Source of the DNA: Podarcis muralis
Taxonomy: Eukaryota
DNA length: 64,000 nucleotides
Assembly: GCF_964188315.1 (NCBI RefSeq)
Contig: NC_135668.1
Span: forward strand, 31,248,001-31,312,000
Direction of reading: 5' to 3'
Below are positions 9,831 to 32,710 of this stretch, in pieces. The translations under genes and the position numbers were made by a program. Numbering within the stretch: the first letter of the stretch is position 1; each line of letters starts with the position of its first letter. The notes under the pieces are model-generated. The model did not search any database and was not told where the DNA came from. It saw only the letters and a list, made by a program, of their open reading frames with translations.

Positions 9831-12788
9831 ACCAGCCCCCTCCATATGTTTTGGACAAACTCTCACCTGCTCCAGCATCCTATGGTCTTGGATACAAACC
9901 CAAAACACCCGGGAAACCCTAGCCTGCAGTAGGCTGAAGTAGACCACAAGCCATGTTGATTTATCCTAATGGTAGGGGACTTTTGTTTGCTGCTGAGAGC
10001 TACATCCCCTCAGGGAACTGTTGGGGGTCATGTAGGGGCAATGGGCAGGGTTGAATCCAGCCATGGGCAGGGCCAGAGCTACTGTGGGCTTGGAACCCCA
10101 CTTTTCTATCTCTAGGCCACCCCTTTTCACCCTGTTCCCCCCTCCCCACCTTGTCACCTTTATGAAATTAGGCTGAAAAGTACTGTTTACAACAAGTGCA
10201 AATTTGACTAATGTTGGGTCAGTCTTTTCAGGTCATCTCAGACCAGCATCTCTCCCTTGCTTCTTCACATCCTTGGGGTGCAGCTAGAACTGGACCTCAG
10301 GGCTAGAGTCCAGGGCCCCCAAATGATGACCCAGAGAATAGGAGACAAGCAGCAAACAGGCCCCATGTCAGCATCCGAGCACTTTTTGCCTTCTTACTTT
10401 TAAAAACATTTTTAGTTGTGGGCTGGCTAATCATGCAGATAGTTACAGATGCTCGTTTTGTTATTTCCACAAGCTGTTTGTGCACCTGATCCCTGCCTTC
10501 TCCTCTGAGGAAGCTACAGGACATGGGCAGGACCCTTCCTCTCTGCCCCAGTGCTGTGTCGGGCCCTGGTGAGAAGCCCTCTCTTCAAAGCAAGCCAGGT
10601 GAGTTATTGCTGTTGACAGCGGCCGCCTTTCTTCTCAACAGCTGGGATCTTGCTGGACAGGAAACCTGCCAGCTCTCTCCTGGACAAATATTTGCCTTCT
10701 CAATCCCTTTGGCACAGGTCAAGGGGAAGAGGCAAATGCCAAGATGAAGAACAGGGAGGGTAGGTGGTTGTCAAGTCCCAGAATCAGTACCACCACTGGC
10801 ACTCAGCAGGGCGCCCGGGTGATCCAAGCAGATCACAAAAGAGCTGCTGAGATAAACAGCTTGGCCAACGCAAGTGGAAGCAGAGGGAGGAGAGGCAGCA
10901 GGCTTGGCCTTTCCCCGTGGGTGGTGTTTACTTGTTCATTGGCCTGCTCCCTGCCTTCCCAGCTGGAGATTTAGGCCCAAGGGGACCTTTGAGGAGTACA
11001 CTGAGGAGACAAGCTTCCCTTGAACTTCAGCTGCCCACCCCCGCCCCACATCCTGGTTGAGCTTCTCCTGAAGTGTGCAGCCCAGACATCAGGAGACTGT
11101 TTTCGGATGCATCTGGGCCACAGCCCATTTTGTGATTTAAAAATTAACCCTGCTGGTTTAAGAGCAGAGTTAAGGCTGTCTCATGTTGGGCTCTCAGGAT
11201 GCTGGACCCTTAGGCTAAGGCCTTAGCAGGCATGCCAGCTGTTGGAAACCACAGGACAGGAGAGTGATCTTGTCCTCAAATCCTGCTTGCAGGCTTCCCA
11301 TTGGGGCATCTGTTTGGCCACTGTGAGAATAGGATGCTGGGTCCCCTTTGGCCTGATCCAGCAGGCTTTTCTGTTCTTATGCCTCATGATCCGTGGTGAT
11401 GCTGTGCAATGCCACAAGTTGTGCTTGATTGCAATGGGAGCTGTAGTCCAAAACATCTGGAGGGCAGCCGGGTTGGGGAAGGGGGTGGCACCTGGCTTTT
11501 CTGCTTCATATCTCAGGTTACCCCCATTTGCATCTTTTGTACGTATTTGGAAAATTACGGCATTGGGAAGATAAGTGTAGCTGCCAGAATGTTGGCAAGA
11601 AGATTTATAGTCAAAGGCACTCTGGGAATCTCCATCCCATATCACACAAACAAAGGAGGAGGAGATGCAGATCCAGGTGGAGAAGTCACAGTCCAGAGAA
11701 AAGGGGCCGCTGTGTCGCCAGGTCAGGTTTGATCTACAGGCTGCCAGCTCACCATGCCAGATCTTCACCTTGCATATGCTCTGTGGTCCTCACACAGGTG
11801 TCCTTCAGAAGGTATTCAATGCGAAAAGGATTCACCAAAGCTTAAGAGATTGAGAAACCACCATTATTGTGTATTTTCTTATTTTCCTACCATATTTCTA
11901 GTTTTCCTTTCACTCAAATGTCACAGGGCAGAGATACATGCAATTAGAAGCAAAGCTATACATGAATATTCAGACAGGCCCACAAAAATTCCATTCTGAG
12001 AGTTACCATCTTTCAGAATTGTCCAATGAAGCATTTATCAACAAATAAGTTATCTGGTCAGTAGGGAAGTGGGCATTCTGGCAGCCAGACAGATTTCAGG
12101 TGGTGGTGAGGCTTCCTTATTTAGAGATAAAGAAATTAATTCAGTGCTGCCCACCAGCTGGTACACACTGTAAGAAAACAGGTACAGTCGGTAAGGAGTA
12201 GGACGCGCTCTCCCTGCCAACTGTTTATGCCCTTTGGCAATGCCTTATCTCTCCCAGAGAGCAGGAGGTAGACAAAAACAACTCTGTTGATTTCCTGTCG
12301 AGTTTGGCGCTCTGCATTAAAGCCTTCGCTCATCCGTGACTCAGCCTGGAAAAGAGTCTCCAAGGAAGTCCTGGTATAGCTTGGAGGAACTAAGCAAAGC
12401 ACCTCCTAATATGGGTTCTAGAACTTCCTCGGGCCATGCTAACATTTCATGACTGATCTCTGCCTTTACTCCCTTATTAAATTGACGAGAAGGAGGGAGC
12501 ACCCTCAAGTTCCTTCCTGCAATACCATCTTTGCTTATCACAGGAACCCTGTGTCTTCCCTCTCTCTGGGCAGGTCATGTGCTCTTCTTTCTGCTGTAAC
12601 AAGCAGGTATCCCTAACCTCATTGGGTTGGGGCAATGTCCCAGCTTCTTCTGACCATTTGCCAGGAGTTCTGCACACCCAACAAGCAAAGGGACATGTTG
12701 GAAAATAGCCCCTCTACAAGTCCCCCAGGCGTCCATCTCCTGCACCACCGGCTTTGAACTCAAGGCATGGGAGGTGCCTGCCTGTCAG

Positions 12789-27020: not shown

Positions 27021-28286
27021 AATTTATACACCACCCATCTGGCTGGGCTTCCTCAGCTACTCTGGGTGGTTCCCAGAAAAATATAAATAATAATAAAATG
27101 TCAGACATTAAAAACTTCCCTGAACAGGGCTGCCTTCATATGTTTTCTAAAAGTTGTGCAATTCTTTATCTCCTTGACATCTGACGAGAGGGCTTTCCAC
27201 AAGGAGGGCGCCACTGCCGAGAAGACCCTTTAAAAGAGGGCTAGACAATATCATGGAGGAGAGGGCTCTCAGTGACTACTAGCCATTAGGGCTATGCTAT
27301 ACCTCCACACCTGGAAACAGCAATGTTTCTGAATACCAGCTGGTGGAAACCACAGGAGGGGAGAGCTGCTCTTGCATTCTGCGTGCTGGTTTACCATAGG
27401 CAATTGCTCAGCCTCTGTGAGAACAGGATGCTGGATTAGATGGGCCACTGGTCTGATCCAGCAGCAGACTCTTATGTTCTTACACTCAGCCATGGAAATT
27501 GTGTGCTATAAGCGTATGGGTGTATCTTTTATCGCTAACCACATTACACAGATATGATGCCTTTTTCTCTCAGACAAATTGTGTTTCTCTCACACACTGA
27601 TGAATCATTGGATTGTACCCCATGTTAGCCTTATTCAGAGCAGACCCATTACCAGTCATGGACATTACTAACTTAGGTTCATTGATTTCAGTGGGTCTAC
27701 CCTGAACAAGATTTAGTTGGATACAACCCCATGGCTGTTATTTGGGGATGGCTTCATTAAGTCTGTTCAGAAAGAGTTAGGTGCATAGAGAGGTTCTAAC
27801 TGTCAGTGATAGAAGTTTTATGGATGTAGAATCTACTAGAATCTTCCTGAACTTTCCAGCGTGTTCACAACAGAACAAGCTTGCAGCTGCATTTATCTAG
27901 TCAAGGTCGCTGCCTCAATGGGAGATACATAGCCTTGCCTGCTGGGCAGTTTATCTTCTGACCTTCATCCTGCTCTTTACTTTTGTTTCCATATATATTG
28001 TGTGATTTTGCTTCTGTAACTGGATGTGCTTTGGAGCAGATTTTGCCTTACTGGGAATTCAGTAAGTTCCTGTATGCATTTAAACCTCAGTAAAACACTT
28101 ACTGAAGAATCCTGCTTCCTGTGTGAGTGTTTTTCTCTGATCTCTACAAGGAGTGGACTCTACTGGGGTTTTTTACCCATATCCTGGGGTTGCCCAGGCA
28201 TGAAGACAGCGGGTGACTGGATTTGGCCATCAGCCCTATCACTGGCATGCAGCTCATCCTGTGCAGTGCAGAAACTATGCACAAAT

Positions 28287-28691
28287 TGTGAAGTTTGGAA
28301 CTTAACTGGTTAAGAAGTTCCCATGATGCCTCAACATTCTGACGTCAGCTTTTAGAAGCTGGGAGGAGCTGGGAGGAGTTTCTGTCTCTTCCTCCTGGGT
28401 CTTTGAGGGGGAAAGACGTAGCCTGTCATGGCTGCAGTGAGCCCAGGAGATCCCTGGGGAATGTCGGAATAAAGAACTGAAAATGGACAAACCTGGACTC
28501 TGTGTGTGTTTGTCAAAGGACGTGACAGTTTATCACCGCTGTGTTTATCTCTGCTAAGGTGTGACTGAGAGCTACCGGACGACGGAGCTGAGTGGCGCAG
28601 CTGAGGGAAGCGCGCCGGACCGGGCTGCCATAAATAGCTAATTGAGGACCAATAAATCAATTAGCGGGGTCCCAATATAACTATTGCCACA
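28287..28691 (+). repeat. 5' LTR (405 bp)
   Basis: Identical by base-by-base reading to 31220-31624; CRE palindrome TGACGTCA 28340-28347; TATA-like CATAAATA ~28629; AATAAA 28651-28656. Confidence 0.95.
28586..28633 (+). other. tRNAiMet 5'-half-like sequence inside LTR (also 31519-31566)
   Basis: AGCTGAGTGGCGCAGC tgag GGAAGCG CGC cggac CGGGC tg CCATAA versus vertebrate tRNAiMet nt 1-37 AGCAGAGTGGCGCAGC GGAAGCG TGC TGGGC CCATAA: 34 of 37 identical with three short insertions. Confidence 0.8.
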
Positions 28692-31219
28692 GGTTATGGG
28701 TACTTAATTACCGCTTGTAAAACTGTCACTGGAAGTGCCGGAATGCGTTTGAAGTTGGCGATCTGAGAAACGGAAGCTGGCCGGAGGTCGGAGGCTGCTT
28801 TCAGTGAGTCTCGCCTGATGTCGAGGTGTTTTGCCTGGTGAAAAGAGGCAAGGAGAGCTGCGGAGCTAAGAGAGCAGCAAGGAATCGTTTCTCCACGGAA
28901 GAAGGGAGAGCCAGAGAAGCTGAAACTGACTGTAAGTACAGCTTGGGGCCCCTTGGGAGAACGGAAGAGGATGGCAGGCTGCCAGGTCTTGGAGGACATT
29001 CAATGCTCACTTTAAGAAGTTGGGCAACCTGGCTGCTGATCTGAAGTCTACTGTTCTGGGTGCCAGGAAGCCAGAGGCCGTTTGGCTAGTGCTCCAGGGA
29101 GTTTGTGAGGCTGGAGGCGGACAGCAAGGGCCGGGAGATGGCTGCTTCAGAACAGGAAGGCAAGATGGCGCTGACCACCTTCGTGAGAGCCGGTGCACAG
29201 CTGGGAAGGGCTGTGGGCCCCAGAGGGGGGGCGAAGGGACTATTGCCACTGCTGCTGTTGCTGTGAAGCTTCAGCAGGAGGCCAGAGCCTGGAGAAAGAA
29301 TACAAAAGCCTAGAGACGGCTGGAGCCCCTGTCCCTGATGCTTTAGCCACAAGGAGTGCTGCTGAGCAGGTGGGGGGGCGGACTTTTCCAAAGGCACGTT
29401 TAAAAGGTTTTCCACTGTACGTGCTGGAATGAAGTGGAGGTTCAGAGTGGGCGGAGCTGGCAAGGAGTGCTTTTCCGGAAGAAGGAGAAGGAGGCCAGCT
29501 GGGAGGAGCCCCGGGCAGTGTTTTTCCACTGGAGTTCGTCATTGCTACACGTGTAATGCAACGTGTCTGCGTGAGGAGCTTGGAGAGAGGCAAGCTGCTG
29601 GGAGCCCTTTACCTACCACTGGGGGTGCAGGAAAGCGTCCTGGGAGCCCTGGGAGCAGTGGGGGGGGGCGGTGAGCAGTAAAAGCACAGAAAAGCCTCTT
29701 TTTCCAAAGGCTGCCAAGAGATGTTTGCGTCGAAAGTCGAAGCCTGGGAAACAGGACACAGCTACAGGCTTCAAGGCCAGCCATCTGCTGCAGAGGGAGA
29801 TACGTGCTGCAGAGTTGTCTGGGAACTCTGAGATAAGTCCAGTCTTCAGAGCAACGCAGGATGTTGCGGTTTCGGACGCTGCCAAGGACAGAGGCAGCGG
29901 GACGTTTGTTGCTTCTATGGCAACTGTGAAGAACAACTCCAGCCAGGACACGGTGACACGCTGGGTGTTTGGGATTCTGCTATCAGGCAGCACCTGATAG
30001 GCAAACCTGCTGGCAAAATGCGGAACTGCAGGGCTGTTTCAACAGGAACACTTGTTATGTTAGCAGACGGAATGAAAAAAATCAGTCTGTGGTGTGGCTA
30101 ACGTGTTTTTCTCTCCTTTACAGGAGGAGCCAGAGGTCTACGTTGTGCCGGGACTGAATTGTTGTCTTTTATCTGTATCTGCTCTAATGAAGCAGGGATT
30201 CAAAAATTTGCTTTGAAAATGACACCTGTTCCATTTTCAGAGGGGGGCGACAACGGGTCAACATGGCGAAGAGCAAGGATAATTTCTTTGTTCTGGAGTC
30301 ACCTCTGGAGGGTGGTGGGAATGCTGGAAAAGCACAGGTGCAGTGTGCTAAGGTTCCCAGTCATGTGCAAAAGTTGCACAGGTGCACAAAAGGGTGTAAA
30401 CTCCGGAAATGTGGGAGGTCCCAAGGGTGCAGGGCATGCAAAGGTGCAAAGGTACTTGGTTTTCCCGGGTTTGGGAGGGTAGCCAAAGAAGCCCTTTGAG
30501 CTTGTTCACACACAGATCTGTCAGGACCCATGAGGTGTGAGAGTCTGGGTGGGGCCAGGTATGTGCCATCGCTGACAGATGGCCACAGCCAGGTTGGCTG
30601 GTGTCTCTCTCTCAAATCACAGGGGGAGGCGGCGCAACTGATCCAGGATTGGGTTGCGGAGGTGGAACTAAGGTTTTCCACCAGGGTGCAAGGGTTCAAG
30701 AGCGACCGAGGGTCACAGTTTACTGGGTCTGCTCTGGAGGAGTTTTTCAAAGAAAAGGGAATACGTCACCAGGTGACGGGTGCAAAGTCTTCTCAAGGGA
30801 GAAGGGAGGCTGTTACTGAACCCGGTGACGGGGGATCAGGTCCAGAATCAGGGTTCAAAACCCGGTGATGGGGACCAAGTCCAGGGTCAGGGTTCAGGGC
30901 AGGTTTGGGCATCTCCAAGGGTTGTTAAAGGAGTGTCCAGGTGTGAGGCTTCATCTCCGGTAAACGTAATGGAGAAAGCTCACGGAAGGGTTGTCAGGTC
31001 AGAGGGGGAAAAGTCTGACGGAAAAGACACAACTGCTGGCCCTAATGGGTCAGTAGGGTATCAGGTCACAGGTGCGTGGAAAAGTGTCGCACAGTGTGAT
31101 TCTGGGAGTGTTGAAGGGGTTCAACAGGTGCCTGGGAAAGATGCCGGGAAGTGGCACAAGGCAAAGGGCAAGGTGTTGAACTCAGAAGGTCTTGTCAGAA
31201 TGGTTTCAGCAAGAGGGGG

Positions 31220-31624
31220 TGTGAAGTTTGGAACTTAACTGGTTAAGAAGTTCCCATGATGCCTCAACATTCTGACGTCAGCTTTTAGAAGCTGGGAGGA
31301 GCTGGGAGGAGTTTCTGTCTCTTCCTCCTGGGTCTTTGAGGGGGAAAGACGTAGCCTGTCATGGCTGCAGTGAGCCCAGGAGATCCCTGGGGAATGTCGG
31401 AATAAAGAACTGAAAATGGACAAACCTGGACTCTGTGTGTGTTTGTCAAAGGACGTGACAGTTTATCACCGCTGTGTTTATCTCTGCTAAGGTGTGACTG
31501 AGAGCTACCGGACGACGGAGCTGAGTGGCGCAGCTGAGGGAAGCGCGCCGGACCGGGCTGCCATAAATAGCTAATTGAGGACCAATAAATCAATTAGCGG
31601 GGTCCCAATATAACTATTGCCACA
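31220..31624 (+). repeat. 3' LTR (405 bp)
   Basis: Directly follows the polypurine tract; identical to the 5' LTR. Confidence 0.95.
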
Positions 31625-31648
31625 CAAATATCATGCAATAACTTTTTC

Positions 31649-31890
31649 ATAAGAACACAGGATGCTGCCCTATACTGAATCAGGCCCTTGGTCCATCTAG
31701 CTCAGTATTGTCAATACCGACTGGAAGCAATGGTTTTCTATGGTTTCAGGCAGAGATCGCTCTACTTGGAGATGCTACTGAGGGTTGAACCTGGGACCTT
31801 CTGCATGCAATGCAGATGCTATACCAACGAGCTATGGCCCTTTCCCAATGCTCAGTGGTAGAACATCTGCATTGCATACAGAAGTTGGGG
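31649..31890 (-). mobile_element. Squam3-type (tRNA/MIR-related) SINE on -, abutting a second SINE head on +
   Basis: Reverse complement of the GCTCAGTGGTAGAGCATCTGC...GGTCCCAGGTTCAA...TACTGAGCTAGATGGACC consensus; head-to-head with GCTCAGTGGTAGAACATCTGC at ~31850. Confidence 0.7.
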
Positions 31891-32311
31891 CCTGCTTCTC
31901 AGTTCCCTCGGTCTGAAGTTGAGTCCACTCCCCACAACACAAAAAGAACTGCACAGACCAAACTCCTGCTGCTGTCCCAGGTGGAGCTCTGCTAGGTGAG
32001 CAGCAGAAATCTCTTGACAGGCCTGCCAAGCCACAGCCCTTCCCATCGCCATGACCCCACCCTCCGGCCATTAGCTGTTGCAGACAAGAGGGGAACACAG
32101 CAGCTGGGACTGGAGTTTGGCAGCCACAGCAAGCAGCTGACCAGGAGCAGAAGGCTCCACTCCACAAGTTGAAATCTCTGGCATAGGAATGGGTCTCAGC
32201 TTCCGCCTGCCTCCCCAGCCAAACACGGACATGGCCAGGAAGTTCCATTTGAATGGGTGCATGTGTGGATCTTGAACTGTGGTGTAATCTGCTTAGGGCC
32301 TCAGGGTGAAC

Positions 32312-32535: not shown

Positions 32536-32710
32536 ACTTGATTCTGAGCCAAATAAATACCCTGGCTGGTTGCCCACAGGCATCTGGTTGGCCACTATGA
32601 GAACAAGATGCTGGACTAGATGAGCCCCCTTTGACCTGGTCCAGCAGGCTCTTCTTAGGTTCTTTTGACCCCCATGCAACTGCCTGAAATTAAGTGGGAC
32701 TGTTATGCTA

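What the first reader, a model, noticed from the sequence alone, without database searches (positions are those of the whole stretch)
28586..28700. The copia LTR carries a sense copy of its own primer, the 5' half of initiator tRNA-Met
Seen: 28586-28633 (and 31519-31566) align collinearly to tRNAiMet nt 1-37 with 34/37 identities (16-, 7-, 3-, 5- and 6-nt blocks, three short insertions), about 60 nt upstream of a PBS complementary to the same tRNA half. A weak continuation (GAGG, then AATAAATCAA versus GATGGATCGA, all differences G>A) overlaps the polyA signal and is speculative. Knowledge: copia-type elements prime from a cleaved 5' tRNAiMet fragment; plant Cassandra elements carry 5S sequences in their LTRs for Pol III transcription; Tf1 self-primes. 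I know no precedent for a tRNA-half inside a copia LTR. Hypotheses: (a) a captured Pol III A-box promoter (TGGCGCAGC), (b) a tRNA mimic pairing with the PBS (only 6 bp, CCATAA/TTATGG) or folding minus-strand strong-stop DNA back on its primer, (c) a relic of template switching onto the primer.
Basis: partly seen in the sequence, partly recalled or inferred. Interest (0 to 1): 0.85.

Follow-up and report, generated by a model that had tools for sequence, protein, structure and literature searches.

The report
Primer tRNA half copied into copia LTR
A lizard-type copia retrotransposon and all five relatives examined carry, in the U5 part of the LTR, a same-sense copy of the 5' half of initiator tRNA-Met, the fragment that primes their reverse transcription, so the block is old, conserved and probably works in primer handling.

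Summary
Window 28586-28633, and the identical 31519-31566 in the 3' LTR, match initiator tRNA-Met nt 1-37 at 34/37 positions with three short insertions. The score lies 8-9 SD above dinucleotide shuffles and is the best hit in the 64 kb on either strand. The block sits 58 nt upstream of the PBS GGTTATGGG, which is complementary to tRNA nt 31-39. The element is a young, internally deleted copia: identical 405-bp LTRs, a 5-bp target-site duplication, and only an integrase remnant.

All five relatives I could fetch, including a Podarcis lilfordi copy with a 1376-aa polyprotein, have the same block. It is in sense orientation, specific to initiator tRNA-Met, limited to the 5' half, matches 28-34 of 39 positions, and lies 7-101 nt upstream of an 8-9-nt PBS. 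Their flanking U5 no longer aligns. Two outgroup copias with the same half-tRNA PBS type have longer PBSs; one complete LTR lacks the block, and the other shows none in the 47 nt of U5 held.

Tests rejected a Pol III promoter, Tf1-like self-priming, pairing with the leader, and a relic of the tRNA 3' half. My best reading is an ancestral capture of the primer by template switching that selection then kept. The mechanism I favour is inferred, at about 0.3: the minus-strand copy pairs with the primer's free tail. The closest precedents are Helenus (tRNA-like LTRs) and the HIV-1 tRNA-like element.

The parts
28287..28691 (+). 5' LTR (405 bp, TG...CA)
   Evidence: 100% identical to 31220-31624. 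Its start, TGTGAAGTTTGGAAC, resembles the Podarcis element's LTR start in L003.
31220..31624 (+). 3' LTR
   Evidence: Identical copy of the 5' LTR.
28282..28286 (.). Target-site duplication CAAAT, left copy (right copy at 31625-31629)
   Evidence: Read directly from the sequence. A 5-bp duplication is typical of copia.
28586..28633 (+). Sense copy of initiator tRNA-Met nt 1-37 (tRNA-half mimic) in U5 of the 5' LTR
   Evidence: 34/37 identities, insertions of 4, 5 and 2 nt, z = 8-9 against shuffles, best hit in the window.
31519..31566 (+). The same block in the 3' LTR
   Evidence: The LTRs are identical.
28692..28700 (+). Primer-binding site GGTTATGGG, complementary to initiator tRNA-Met nt 31-39 (anticodon loop plus 2 nt)
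   Evidence: Starts immediately after the LTR's terminal CA. The same 8-9-nt PBS is present in all clade members.
28468..28473 (+). AATAAA followed by a GT-rich stretch (28501-28513): probable polyA signal marking the R/U5 border
   Evidence: An AATAAA is present at the equivalent place in all relatives, mostly within AAATAAAG and AATAAAC in L005. Function is inferred, not tested.
28637..28665 (+). 9-bp hairpin GCTAATTGA / TCAATTAGC between the block and the PBS, with a second AATAAA (28651-28656) in its loop
   Evidence: It is not conserved outside the two non-autonomous lizard elements.
31208..31219 (+). Polypurine tract AGCAAGAGGGGG
   Evidence: Abuts the 3' LTR.
30530..30865 (+). Integrase core remnant, the only clear coding remnant in the 2.5-kb internal region
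   Evidence: Pfam rve, E = 1.5e-8. It is 56% identical to P0001 and 47% to the copia polyprotein P0008.
30094..30213 (+). Weak remnant of the Pol beta-barrel (protease-proximal) domain
   Evidence: Pfam Pol_BBD, E = 0.015, below the curated cutoff.

Best explanation
What it is (confidence about 0.9): a conserved U5 module derived from the element's own reverse-transcription primer, the 5' half (nt 1 to about 37) of initiator tRNA-Met. It is in the same sense as the genomic RNA. It is ancestral to a clade of copia elements found in lacertid lizards and in unidentified hosts of metagenome and read-archive contigs.

Origin (inferred): during minus-strand synthesis through U5, reverse transcriptase switched onto a packaged primer half, copied it to its 5' end, and switched back. 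This explains the sense orientation, the start at tRNA nt 1 and the absence of the 3' half.

Function (inferred, about 0.3): once the first 50-150 nt of minus-strand DNA are made, the DNA complement of the block lies in cis to the primer. It can pair with the primer's 30 free 5' nucleotides, because nt 31-39 are held by the PBS. That RNA:DNA hybrid would be an RNase H substrate, so the primer would be trimmed to the 8-9 nt held on the PBS. Plus-strand strong-stop DNA would then copy only those 8-9 nt. This matches the unusually short PBS of exactly this clade and would keep the second strand transfer in register.
For: Shown:
- Seven U5 copies from six elements each resemble initiator tRNA-Met nt 1-39 in sense (28-34 of 39 positions, p <= 0.002 each). 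They do not resemble elongator Met, Lys or Asp tRNAs, the antisense strand, or the 3' half.
- Different members keep different perfect stretches: 18 nt (tRNA nt 7-24) in L005, 12 nt in the window, and nt 16-30 in L001 with a single 1-nt insertion.
- L001, L002 and L003 share a 1-nt insertion before CTGG, which argues for common descent.
- Flanking U5 and leader are at the shuffled baseline between elements (0.59 against 0.57). The block is 72-87% identical to the tRNA. The polyproteins compared are only 43-50% identical to one another.
- The PBS is 8-9 nt in all six members. It is 11 and 13 nt in two outgroup copias with the same PBS type. L007's complete LTR has no block, and the 47 nt of U5 held for L006 show none.
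- In the predicted fold of primer plus nascent minus-strand DNA, 25-29 of the 30 free primer nt pair with the block's complement in all six members, and 0 pair in the outgroup.
- Transitions away from the tRNA are skewed to G>A and T>C (16 cells at 10 sites) over A>G and C>T (3 cells at 3 sites). T>C occurs at 3 of 3 T sites and A>G at 0 of 6 A sites (Fisher p = 0.012). These are the changes that keep wobble pairs only if the complement of the block pairs with the tRNA.
Against: - No experiment was done. The fold-back follows from the sequence similarity itself and used RNA energy parameters.
- At the level of distinct sites the substitution skew is not significant (p = 0.09-0.17). Its G>A part could reflect APOBEC-type editing, which is known for vertebrate LTR elements (PMC4866542).
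- Only six elements and two outgroups were available. Three members have unknown hosts.
- The link between short PBS and presence of the block rests on one clade, so it is effectively one evolutionary event.
- D-stem pairing is kept in 26 of 28 cells, which would equally suit an RNA-level structural mimic.
- Where reverse transcriptase stops on the modified primer half is not known for these hosts.
Confidence: 0.4

Rival explanations
1. RNA-level tRNA mimic. In the genomic RNA the block folds or presents itself like the primer's 5' half. It competes for a partner of the tRNA, either a protein that holds or cuts initiator tRNA-Met or the tRNA's own 3' half. This would free or deliver the primer half to the adjacent PBS, as proposed for the HIV-1 tRNA-like element and LysRS.
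For: It is the same tRNA as the primer and lies next to the PBS in every member. D-stem pairs are kept in 26 of 28 cells, and four of six single-sided changes preserve pairing. Several insertions fall at tRNA loops or junctions (D loop, nt 24-26, anticodon loop). HIV-1 gives a precedent for tRNA mimicry beside a PBS (PMC5113203, PMC5689005).
Against: A half tRNA cannot form acceptor or anticodon stems, and no partner strands were found nearby (the 3' half test gave p about 0.6-0.7). L001 has a 2-nt insertion inside the D stem. The transition skew runs opposite to what sense-strand pairing with an antisense partner would tolerate. The D-stem count is biased because the structure was taken from the tRNA itself.
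Confidence: 0.2
2. Functionless relic. This clade's reverse transcriptase tends to switch onto the abundant primer half, and the inserted copy persists or is re-acquired without any role.
For: Template switching is the simplest origin. Spacer length to the PBS varies from 7 to 101 nt. Identity to the tRNA (about 0.8) and pairwise identity (about 0.65) fit star-like decay from a tRNA-identical ancestor. L050 shows another, unrelated arrangement of sense tRNA next to a PBS.
Against: Flanks have decayed to the random baseline while the block keeps 72-87% identity. Shared derived indels and substitutions argue for a single old acquisition rather than repeated captures. The block is present in every clade member found.
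Confidence: 0.15
3. U5-leader stem or bipartite PBS. The block pairs with a box downstream of the PBS that is also complementary to the tRNA D arm. This would enclose the PBS in a stem that the tRNA opens.
For: In L003 and L005 the predicted fold pairs GGAAGCG with a GUUUCC-like or ACGUUUC-like box just after the PBS. L002 has ACGCTTTG in its leader.
Against: Leader complementarity to tRNA nt 1-30 or to the block is not better than shuffles in any element (p = 0.07-0.72; Fisher combined 0.30 and 0.32). The register differs between elements. Such pairing would not require tRNA-likeness over 35 nt.
Confidence: 0.08
4. Internal Pol III promoter, as in Cassandra, Helenus and TRIMp3 elements.
For: An A-box-like TGGCGCAGC is present in the window, and an intact A box in L005. 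Helenus LTRs carry tRNA-like Pol III promoters (PMC10886601).
Against: No B box in any member (best matches have 3-4 mismatches). The A box is broken in most members. The window element has 13 runs of four or more T after the block, the first 240 nt downstream. The block also occurs in relatives with 1065-1376-aa pol ORFs, one of them 4.7 kb between its LTRs. A transcript starting there would lack R.
Confidence: 0.03
5. Tf1-like self-priming. The block's 3' end pairs with the PBS and is cut to serve as the primer.
For: 6 bp (CCATAA/TTATGG) in the window and 5 bp in L002.
Against: Pairing is absent in L001, L003, L004 and L005. tRNA positions 34-39 are the least conserved. The block is internal to U5, not at the RNA 5' end.
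Confidence: 0.03

Closest known systems
Helenus / TRIMp3 (Kojima 2024, PMC10886601) and Cassandra
   Same: A small-RNA-derived sequence sits inside both LTRs of an LTR retrotransposon. Fungal Helenus elements depend on copia, often have a PBS complementary to the initiator tRNA-Met anticodon loop, and make 5-bp target-site duplications.
   Different: Helenus carries a whole tRNA-like unit with conserved A and B boxes, read as a Pol III promoter. Its elements are short non-coding TRIMs (311-1263 bp), and animal Helenus is Gypsy-dependent. The paper does not link the tRNA type to the primer and found no complementarity to the PBS. Here only the 5' half is present, with no B box. It is the same tRNA and the same half as the primer, it lies in U5, and it is also present in relatives with full polyproteins.
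HIV-1 tRNA-like element next to the PBS (PMC5113203, PMC5689005)
   Same: A cis element beside the PBS imitates the element's own primer tRNA and is conserved across lineages.
   Different: The HIV-1 element mimics the anticodon arm and the global fold, and binds LysRS. Its resemblance is structural rather than a collinear copy. Here the resemblance is a collinear 37-nt primary-sequence copy, and the anticodon loop is its least conserved part. Binding was not tested.
Half-tRNA priming in Drosophila copia and yeast Ty5 (as cited in PMC10886601, refs 37 and 38)
   Same: The PBS is complementary to the anticodon-loop region of initiator tRNA-Met, so a 3'-truncated tRNA serves as primer.
   Different: To my knowledge, which is unverified here, no sense copy of the primer has been described in those LTRs. 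From memory, their PBSs are longer than the 8-9 nt seen in this clade.
Tf1/Sushi self-priming and the extended tRNA-binding boxes of Ty1/Ty3 (established knowledge, not re-read here)
   Same: Sequences outside the PBS in U5 or the leader take part in primer formation or binding.
   Different: In Tf1 the RNA 5' end is complementary to the PBS. The Ty1 boxes are complementary (antisense) to tRNA arms. Here the block is in sense to the tRNA and is not complementary to the PBS or the leader.

Membership tests
Ty1/copia (Pseudoviridae) LTR retrotransposon | Two LTRs with TG...CA termini and a 5-bp target-site duplication | tested here: met
   LTRs of 405 bp, 100% identical, TG..CA termini; target-site duplication CAAAT.
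Ty1/copia (Pseudoviridae) LTR retrotransposon | Polyprotein with integrase upstream of reverse transcriptase (gag, protease, IN, RT order) | tested here: met
   The window keeps only an rve remnant. Relatives P0008 and P0151 have Retrotran_gag_2, rve, SH3_retrovirus and RVT_2 in that order.
Ty1/copia (Pseudoviridae) LTR retrotransposon | PBS next to the 5' LTR and a polypurine tract next to the 3' LTR | tested here: met
   GGTTATGGG at 28692-28700 is complementary to initiator tRNA-Met nt 31-39. The polypurine tract is at 31208-31219.
Helenus / TRIMp3 | tRNA-like sequence in the LTR with conserved A and B boxes | tested here: not met
   No B box in any member. The A box is intact only in L005. 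The 3' half of the tRNA is absent.
Helenus / TRIMp3 | Short non-coding TRIM (about 0.3-1.3 kb) compatible with Pol III transcription | tested here: not met
   The window element is 3338 bp with 13 runs of four or more T after the block. The block is also present in relatives with 1065-1376-aa pol ORFs.
Tf1-type self-priming element | The RNA 5' end is complementary to the PBS (about 11 nt) and is conserved | tested here: not met
   At most 6 bp, not conserved, and the block is internal to U5.
HIV-1-type tRNA-like element | Mimics the primer tRNA beside the PBS | tested here: met
   It is the same tRNA as the primer and lies 7-101 nt upstream of the PBS in all six members.
HIV-1-type tRNA-like element | Anticodon-arm mimicry and competitive binding to the cognate aminoacyl-tRNA synthetase | not testable with these tools
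   The anticodon-loop positions are the least conserved. No binding data can be obtained here.
Functional tRNA gene or tRNA-derived SINE | A cloverleaf recognised by tRNA finders, or a SINE body and tail with its own target-site duplication | tested here: not met
   ARAGORN and Rfam give no call. Only the 5' half is present, and no SINE tail or flanking duplication is visible in the sequence.

The most novel reading that the evidence does not exclude
The block is a cis-acting 'primer trimmer'. Its minus-strand DNA copy folds back on the tRNA-half primer and makes an RNase H substrate, leaving only the 8-9 nt held on the PBS. This would be a sequence-encoded way to set the end of plus-strand strong-stop DNA, in place of the modified-base stop that retroviruses use. 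It would also explain how a clade can run on an 8-9-nt PBS.
Probability: 0.25. Interest if true: 0.85.

Novelty: new variant of a known kind. Interest (0 to 1): 0.66.

Why it matters
How half-tRNA primers are made, positioned and removed in copia-type elements has been open since the 1986 copia work. A conserved copy of the primer built into U5 gives a concrete cis element to mutate. If it acts through the minus-strand DNA, it would be a new way of controlling primer removal and the second strand transfer. If it acts as RNA, it would be a second, independent case of primer-tRNA mimicry beside a PBS, after HIV-1.

In practical terms it is a diagnostic signature for this clade. It also explains some of the partial tRNA-like hits in LTR libraries that are not Pol III promoters.

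Tried and rejected
- Continuation into the tRNA 3' half: not above shuffles in any member (p = 0.6-0.74).
- Pol III promoter: no B box, the A box is mostly broken, and there are many T runs.
- Block:PBS pairing or self-priming: not conserved.
- Second tRNA-binding box or a U5-leader stem: seen by eye and in the predicted folds of L003 and L005, but not significant (Fisher 0.30 and 0.32).
- A long palindrome between the block and the PBS (prompted by L050): only a local 9-bp hairpin in the window, not shared.
- Rfam and ARAGORN: no tRNA call.
- MAFFT alignment of the blocks was poor. I used tRNA-anchored pairwise alignments instead, and I did not use the consensus line the tool printed.
- Other copies in the window's own genome: the window ORF is not on record, and the word-index protein search found nothing.
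- Two contig look-ups returned no DNA, and one returned a contig without an LTR.
- The metagenome and viral pattern scans returned what look like chance matches; the ones I inspected (L037 and its look-alikes) lie in bacterial-looking sequence. The exception is L050.
- tRNA specificity could be tested against only three other tRNAs (elongator Met, Lys, Asp, from PMC8216282), not a full tRNA set.
Full report
**Anatomy of the element.** The finding lies in a complete but internally deleted LTR retrotransposon at window 28287-31624.
- The LTRs (28287-28691 and 31220-31624) are 405 bp, 100% identical, and begin TG and end CA.
- They are flanked by a 5-bp duplication, CAAAT.
- Directly after the 5' LTR comes GGTTATGGG (28692-28700). 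Directly before the 3' LTR comes a polypurine tract (31208-31219).
- In the 2.5-kb interior only an integrase core remnant is recognisable (30530-30865, Pfam rve, E = 1.5e-8), plus a sub-threshold piece of the Pol beta-barrel domain.
- No other copy is present in the window.

It is therefore a young insertion of a non-autonomous copia derivative.

**The observation.** I took the vertebrate initiator tRNA-Met sequence from a paper rather than from memory (PMC8216282).
- Window 28586-28633 aligns to tRNA nt 1-37 with 34 identities and insertions of 4, 5 and 2 nt.
- Under three scoring schemes the score is reached by 0-1 of 2000 dinucleotide shuffles of the LTR and by 0 of 2000 shuffles of the tRNA half (z = 8.1-8.9).
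- It is the best match to the tRNA half anywhere in the 64 kb on either strand.
- The PBS is the exact complement of tRNA nt 31-39, so block and PBS point to the same tRNA and the same half.
- The proposed continuation into the 3' half is not above chance.
- tRNA finders do not call the region.

**Relatives.** A full-library protein search with the integrase remnant and two follow-up searches led to five related elements whose DNA I could fetch.
- L001 and L003 come from assembly GCA_947686815.1. A source names the L003 protein as Podarcis lilfordi.
- L002 and L004 come from ENA metagenome assembly ERZ27260045.
- L005 comes from a Logan assembly of ERR14656775.
- L001 is a non-autonomous relative, about 77% identical to parts of the window element's interior.
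- L003 encodes a 1376-aa polyprotein, and its LTR starts almost like the window's.
- L003, L002 and L005 share only 43-50% amino-acid identity in their pol or gag-pol products. L004's gag-integrase product is 50% identical to that of L002.

Every one of these elements has the PBS GGTTATGG(G). Upstream of it by 7-101 nt, each has a sense block matching initiator tRNA-Met nt 1-39 at 28-34 positions. L004 shows the block in both of its diverged LTRs.

Each of the seven copies is individually significant (p <= 0.002, z = 3.8-8.8). Each scores at background for elongator Met, Lys and Asp tRNAs and for the tRNA 3' half. Antisense scores are lower in every copy, though only narrowly so in the weakest one (L004 5' LTR, 82 against 85).

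Different members keep different stretches intact:
- GTGGCGCAGCGGAAGCGT (18 nt) in L005;
- GAGTGGCGCAGC plus GGAAGCG plus CCATAA in the window;
- GGAAGCGTGgCTGGGC in L001.

Chance resemblance to a motif would not produce this pattern. L001, L002 and L003 share a 1-nt insertion before CTGG, and several members share G30>A, so the block is inherited rather than captured anew each time.

**Position within the LTR.** All members have an AATAAA, mostly within AAATAAAG and followed in most members by a GT-rich stretch, 170-250 nt upstream of the PBS. No conserved signal lies downstream of the block. The block therefore lies in U5 and is present once in the genomic RNA, upstream of the PBS. This assignment is an inference from sequence signals.

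**Selection.** Between elements, the 45-nt segments on either side of the block and the leader are no more alike than shuffled sequence (0.59 against 0.57). The blocks are 0.65 identical pairwise and 0.72-0.87 identical to the tRNA. The block has thus been held while its surroundings randomised.

Two outgroup copias have the same half-tRNA PBS type. L007/L008 is 33% identical to P0151, and L006 comes from GCA_902806785.1. Their PBSs are longer (11 and 13 nt). No block is found in L007's full LTR or in the 47 nt of U5 held for L006.

**Mechanisms tested.**
- **Pol III promoter.** There is no B box anywhere, and the A box is intact in only one member. The window element has 13 T runs after the block, and the block is present in relatives with long pol ORFs. 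Rejected.
- **Self-priming or block:PBS pairing.** This gives 6 bp in the window but is not conserved, and tRNA positions 34-39 are the least conserved. Rejected.
- **A second tRNA-binding box or a U5-leader stem.** It is suggested by the folds of L003 and L005. However, leader complementarity to the tRNA or to the block does not beat shuffles (combined p = 0.30 and 0.32). Not supported.

What remains is selection for likeness to the tRNA itself over about 35 nt. That implies one of two things. Either something complementary to the block's complement, namely the primer, is the partner, or a factor that recognises the tRNA half is.

Two observations lean to the first option:
- Transitions away from the tRNA are mostly G>A and T>C (16 cells at 10 sites) rather than A>G and C>T (3 cells at 3 sites). 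T>C occurs at 3 of 3 T sites and A>G at 0 of 6 A sites. Only G>A and T>C preserve wobble pairs when the complement of the block faces the tRNA.
- When the primer half is joined to the nascent minus-strand DNA, with nt 31-39 held unpaired, the predicted fold pairs 25-29 of the 30 free primer nt with the block's complement in all six members. None pair in the outgroup.

Both observations are weak. The skew is not significant by distinct sites, and its G>A part may reflect APOBEC-type editing (PMC4866542). The fold follows from the similarity itself. D-stem pairs are kept in 26 of 28 cells, which keeps an RNA-level mimic in play.

**Proposed working model (inferred).** An ancestral reverse transcriptase switched onto a packaged primer half while copying U5 and inserted a sense copy. 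The copy was then kept because its minus-strand complement captures the primer's free tail in an RNA:DNA hybrid. RNase H trims the tail, and plus-strand strong-stop DNA ends after 8-9 nt. That is the length of the PBS in this clade and not in the outgroups.

I put the identity and conservation of the block at about 0.9 and this mechanism at about 0.3. The main rivals are an RNA mimic that competes for a tRNA partner (0.2) and a functionless relic (0.15).

**Comparison with the literature.** Full-text searches found no description of a primer-half copy in copia U5.
- The closest precedent is Helenus/TRIMp3 (PMC10886601). These are whole tRNA-like units with A and B boxes in the LTRs of short non-coding TRIMs, read as Pol III promoters and explicitly unrelated to priming. 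The same paper remarks that 'not a few' Repbase LTRs contain partial tRNA similarity, which may include elements like this one.
- The HIV-1 tRNA-like element (PMC5113203, PMC5689005) is the closest functional analogue. It differs in being a structural anticodon-arm mimic.
- The element is a member of Ty1/copia. It fails the defining tests for Helenus, Cassandra-type and Tf1-type elements.

**Limits.**
- Only six elements were available, and three have unknown hosts.
- Only three control tRNAs were available.
- I had no access to the window's own genome for other copies.
- All functional statements are inference.
The copies are described only as found. The window element lacks most of pol. L003 has lost nearly all of its 3' LTR, keeping only the last 26 nt at L003:7072-7097.

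Noticed in passing
L050:155-207 (JGI metagenome contig Ga0136559_1055940): A sense initiator-tRNA-like stretch (equivalent to nt 12-39, near-perfect) is followed by TGTTGA-C-TCAACA and then GGTTATGGG. CCCATAACCTGTTGA / TCAACAGGTTATGGG is a perfect 15-nt inverted repeat. It reads like the junction of tRNA primer and minus-strand DNA fixed in DNA next to a U5 end plus PBS. The host and the element type are unknown.
   Followed up: partly
L003:7072-7097 and L003:2788-2813: The Podarcis lilfordi copy encoding the 1376-aa polyprotein is annotated in NCBI as 'Retrovirus-related Pol polyprotein from transposon TNT 1-94'. It has lost almost all of its 3' LTR: only the last 26 nt remain, fused to the end of pol.
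   Followed up: partly
window 28340-28347 and 28357-28378 (repeated in the 3' LTR): U3 contains a CRE-like palindrome TGACGTCA and a tandem GCTGGGAGGAG GCTGGGAGGAG. The tandem GGGAGGAGCTGGGAGGAGC also occurs in the LTR of the Podarcis element L003, so it is a candidate conserved promoter element.
   Followed up: no
window about 31690-31900, and 27385-27446 / 32565-32626: Right after the 3' LTR lie two tRNA-derived, SINE-like heads in opposite orientation. They contain GCTCAGTGGTAGAAC-type and GGGCCATAGCTCGTTGGTATAGC-type sequences. ARAGORN and Rfam do not call them. A 62-nt repeat pair (79% identical) flanks the insertion at a distance. Both suggest a repeat-rich, squamate-like genome.
   Followed up: no
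L001:6280-6579 and 10104-10403: A second LTR element, with 99% identical repeats of at least 300 nt spaced 3.8 kb apart, is nested in or just after the integrase remnant of the Podarcis non-autonomous copia relative.
   Followed up: no
L004:6-237 versus L004:4713-4945: The two LTRs of this metagenome-assembled copia are only about 80% identical. The 3' LTR copy of the tRNA-like block is closer to the tRNA (33/39) than the 5' copy (28/39). Either the insertion is old, or the assembly is a chimera of two family members.
   Followed up: partly
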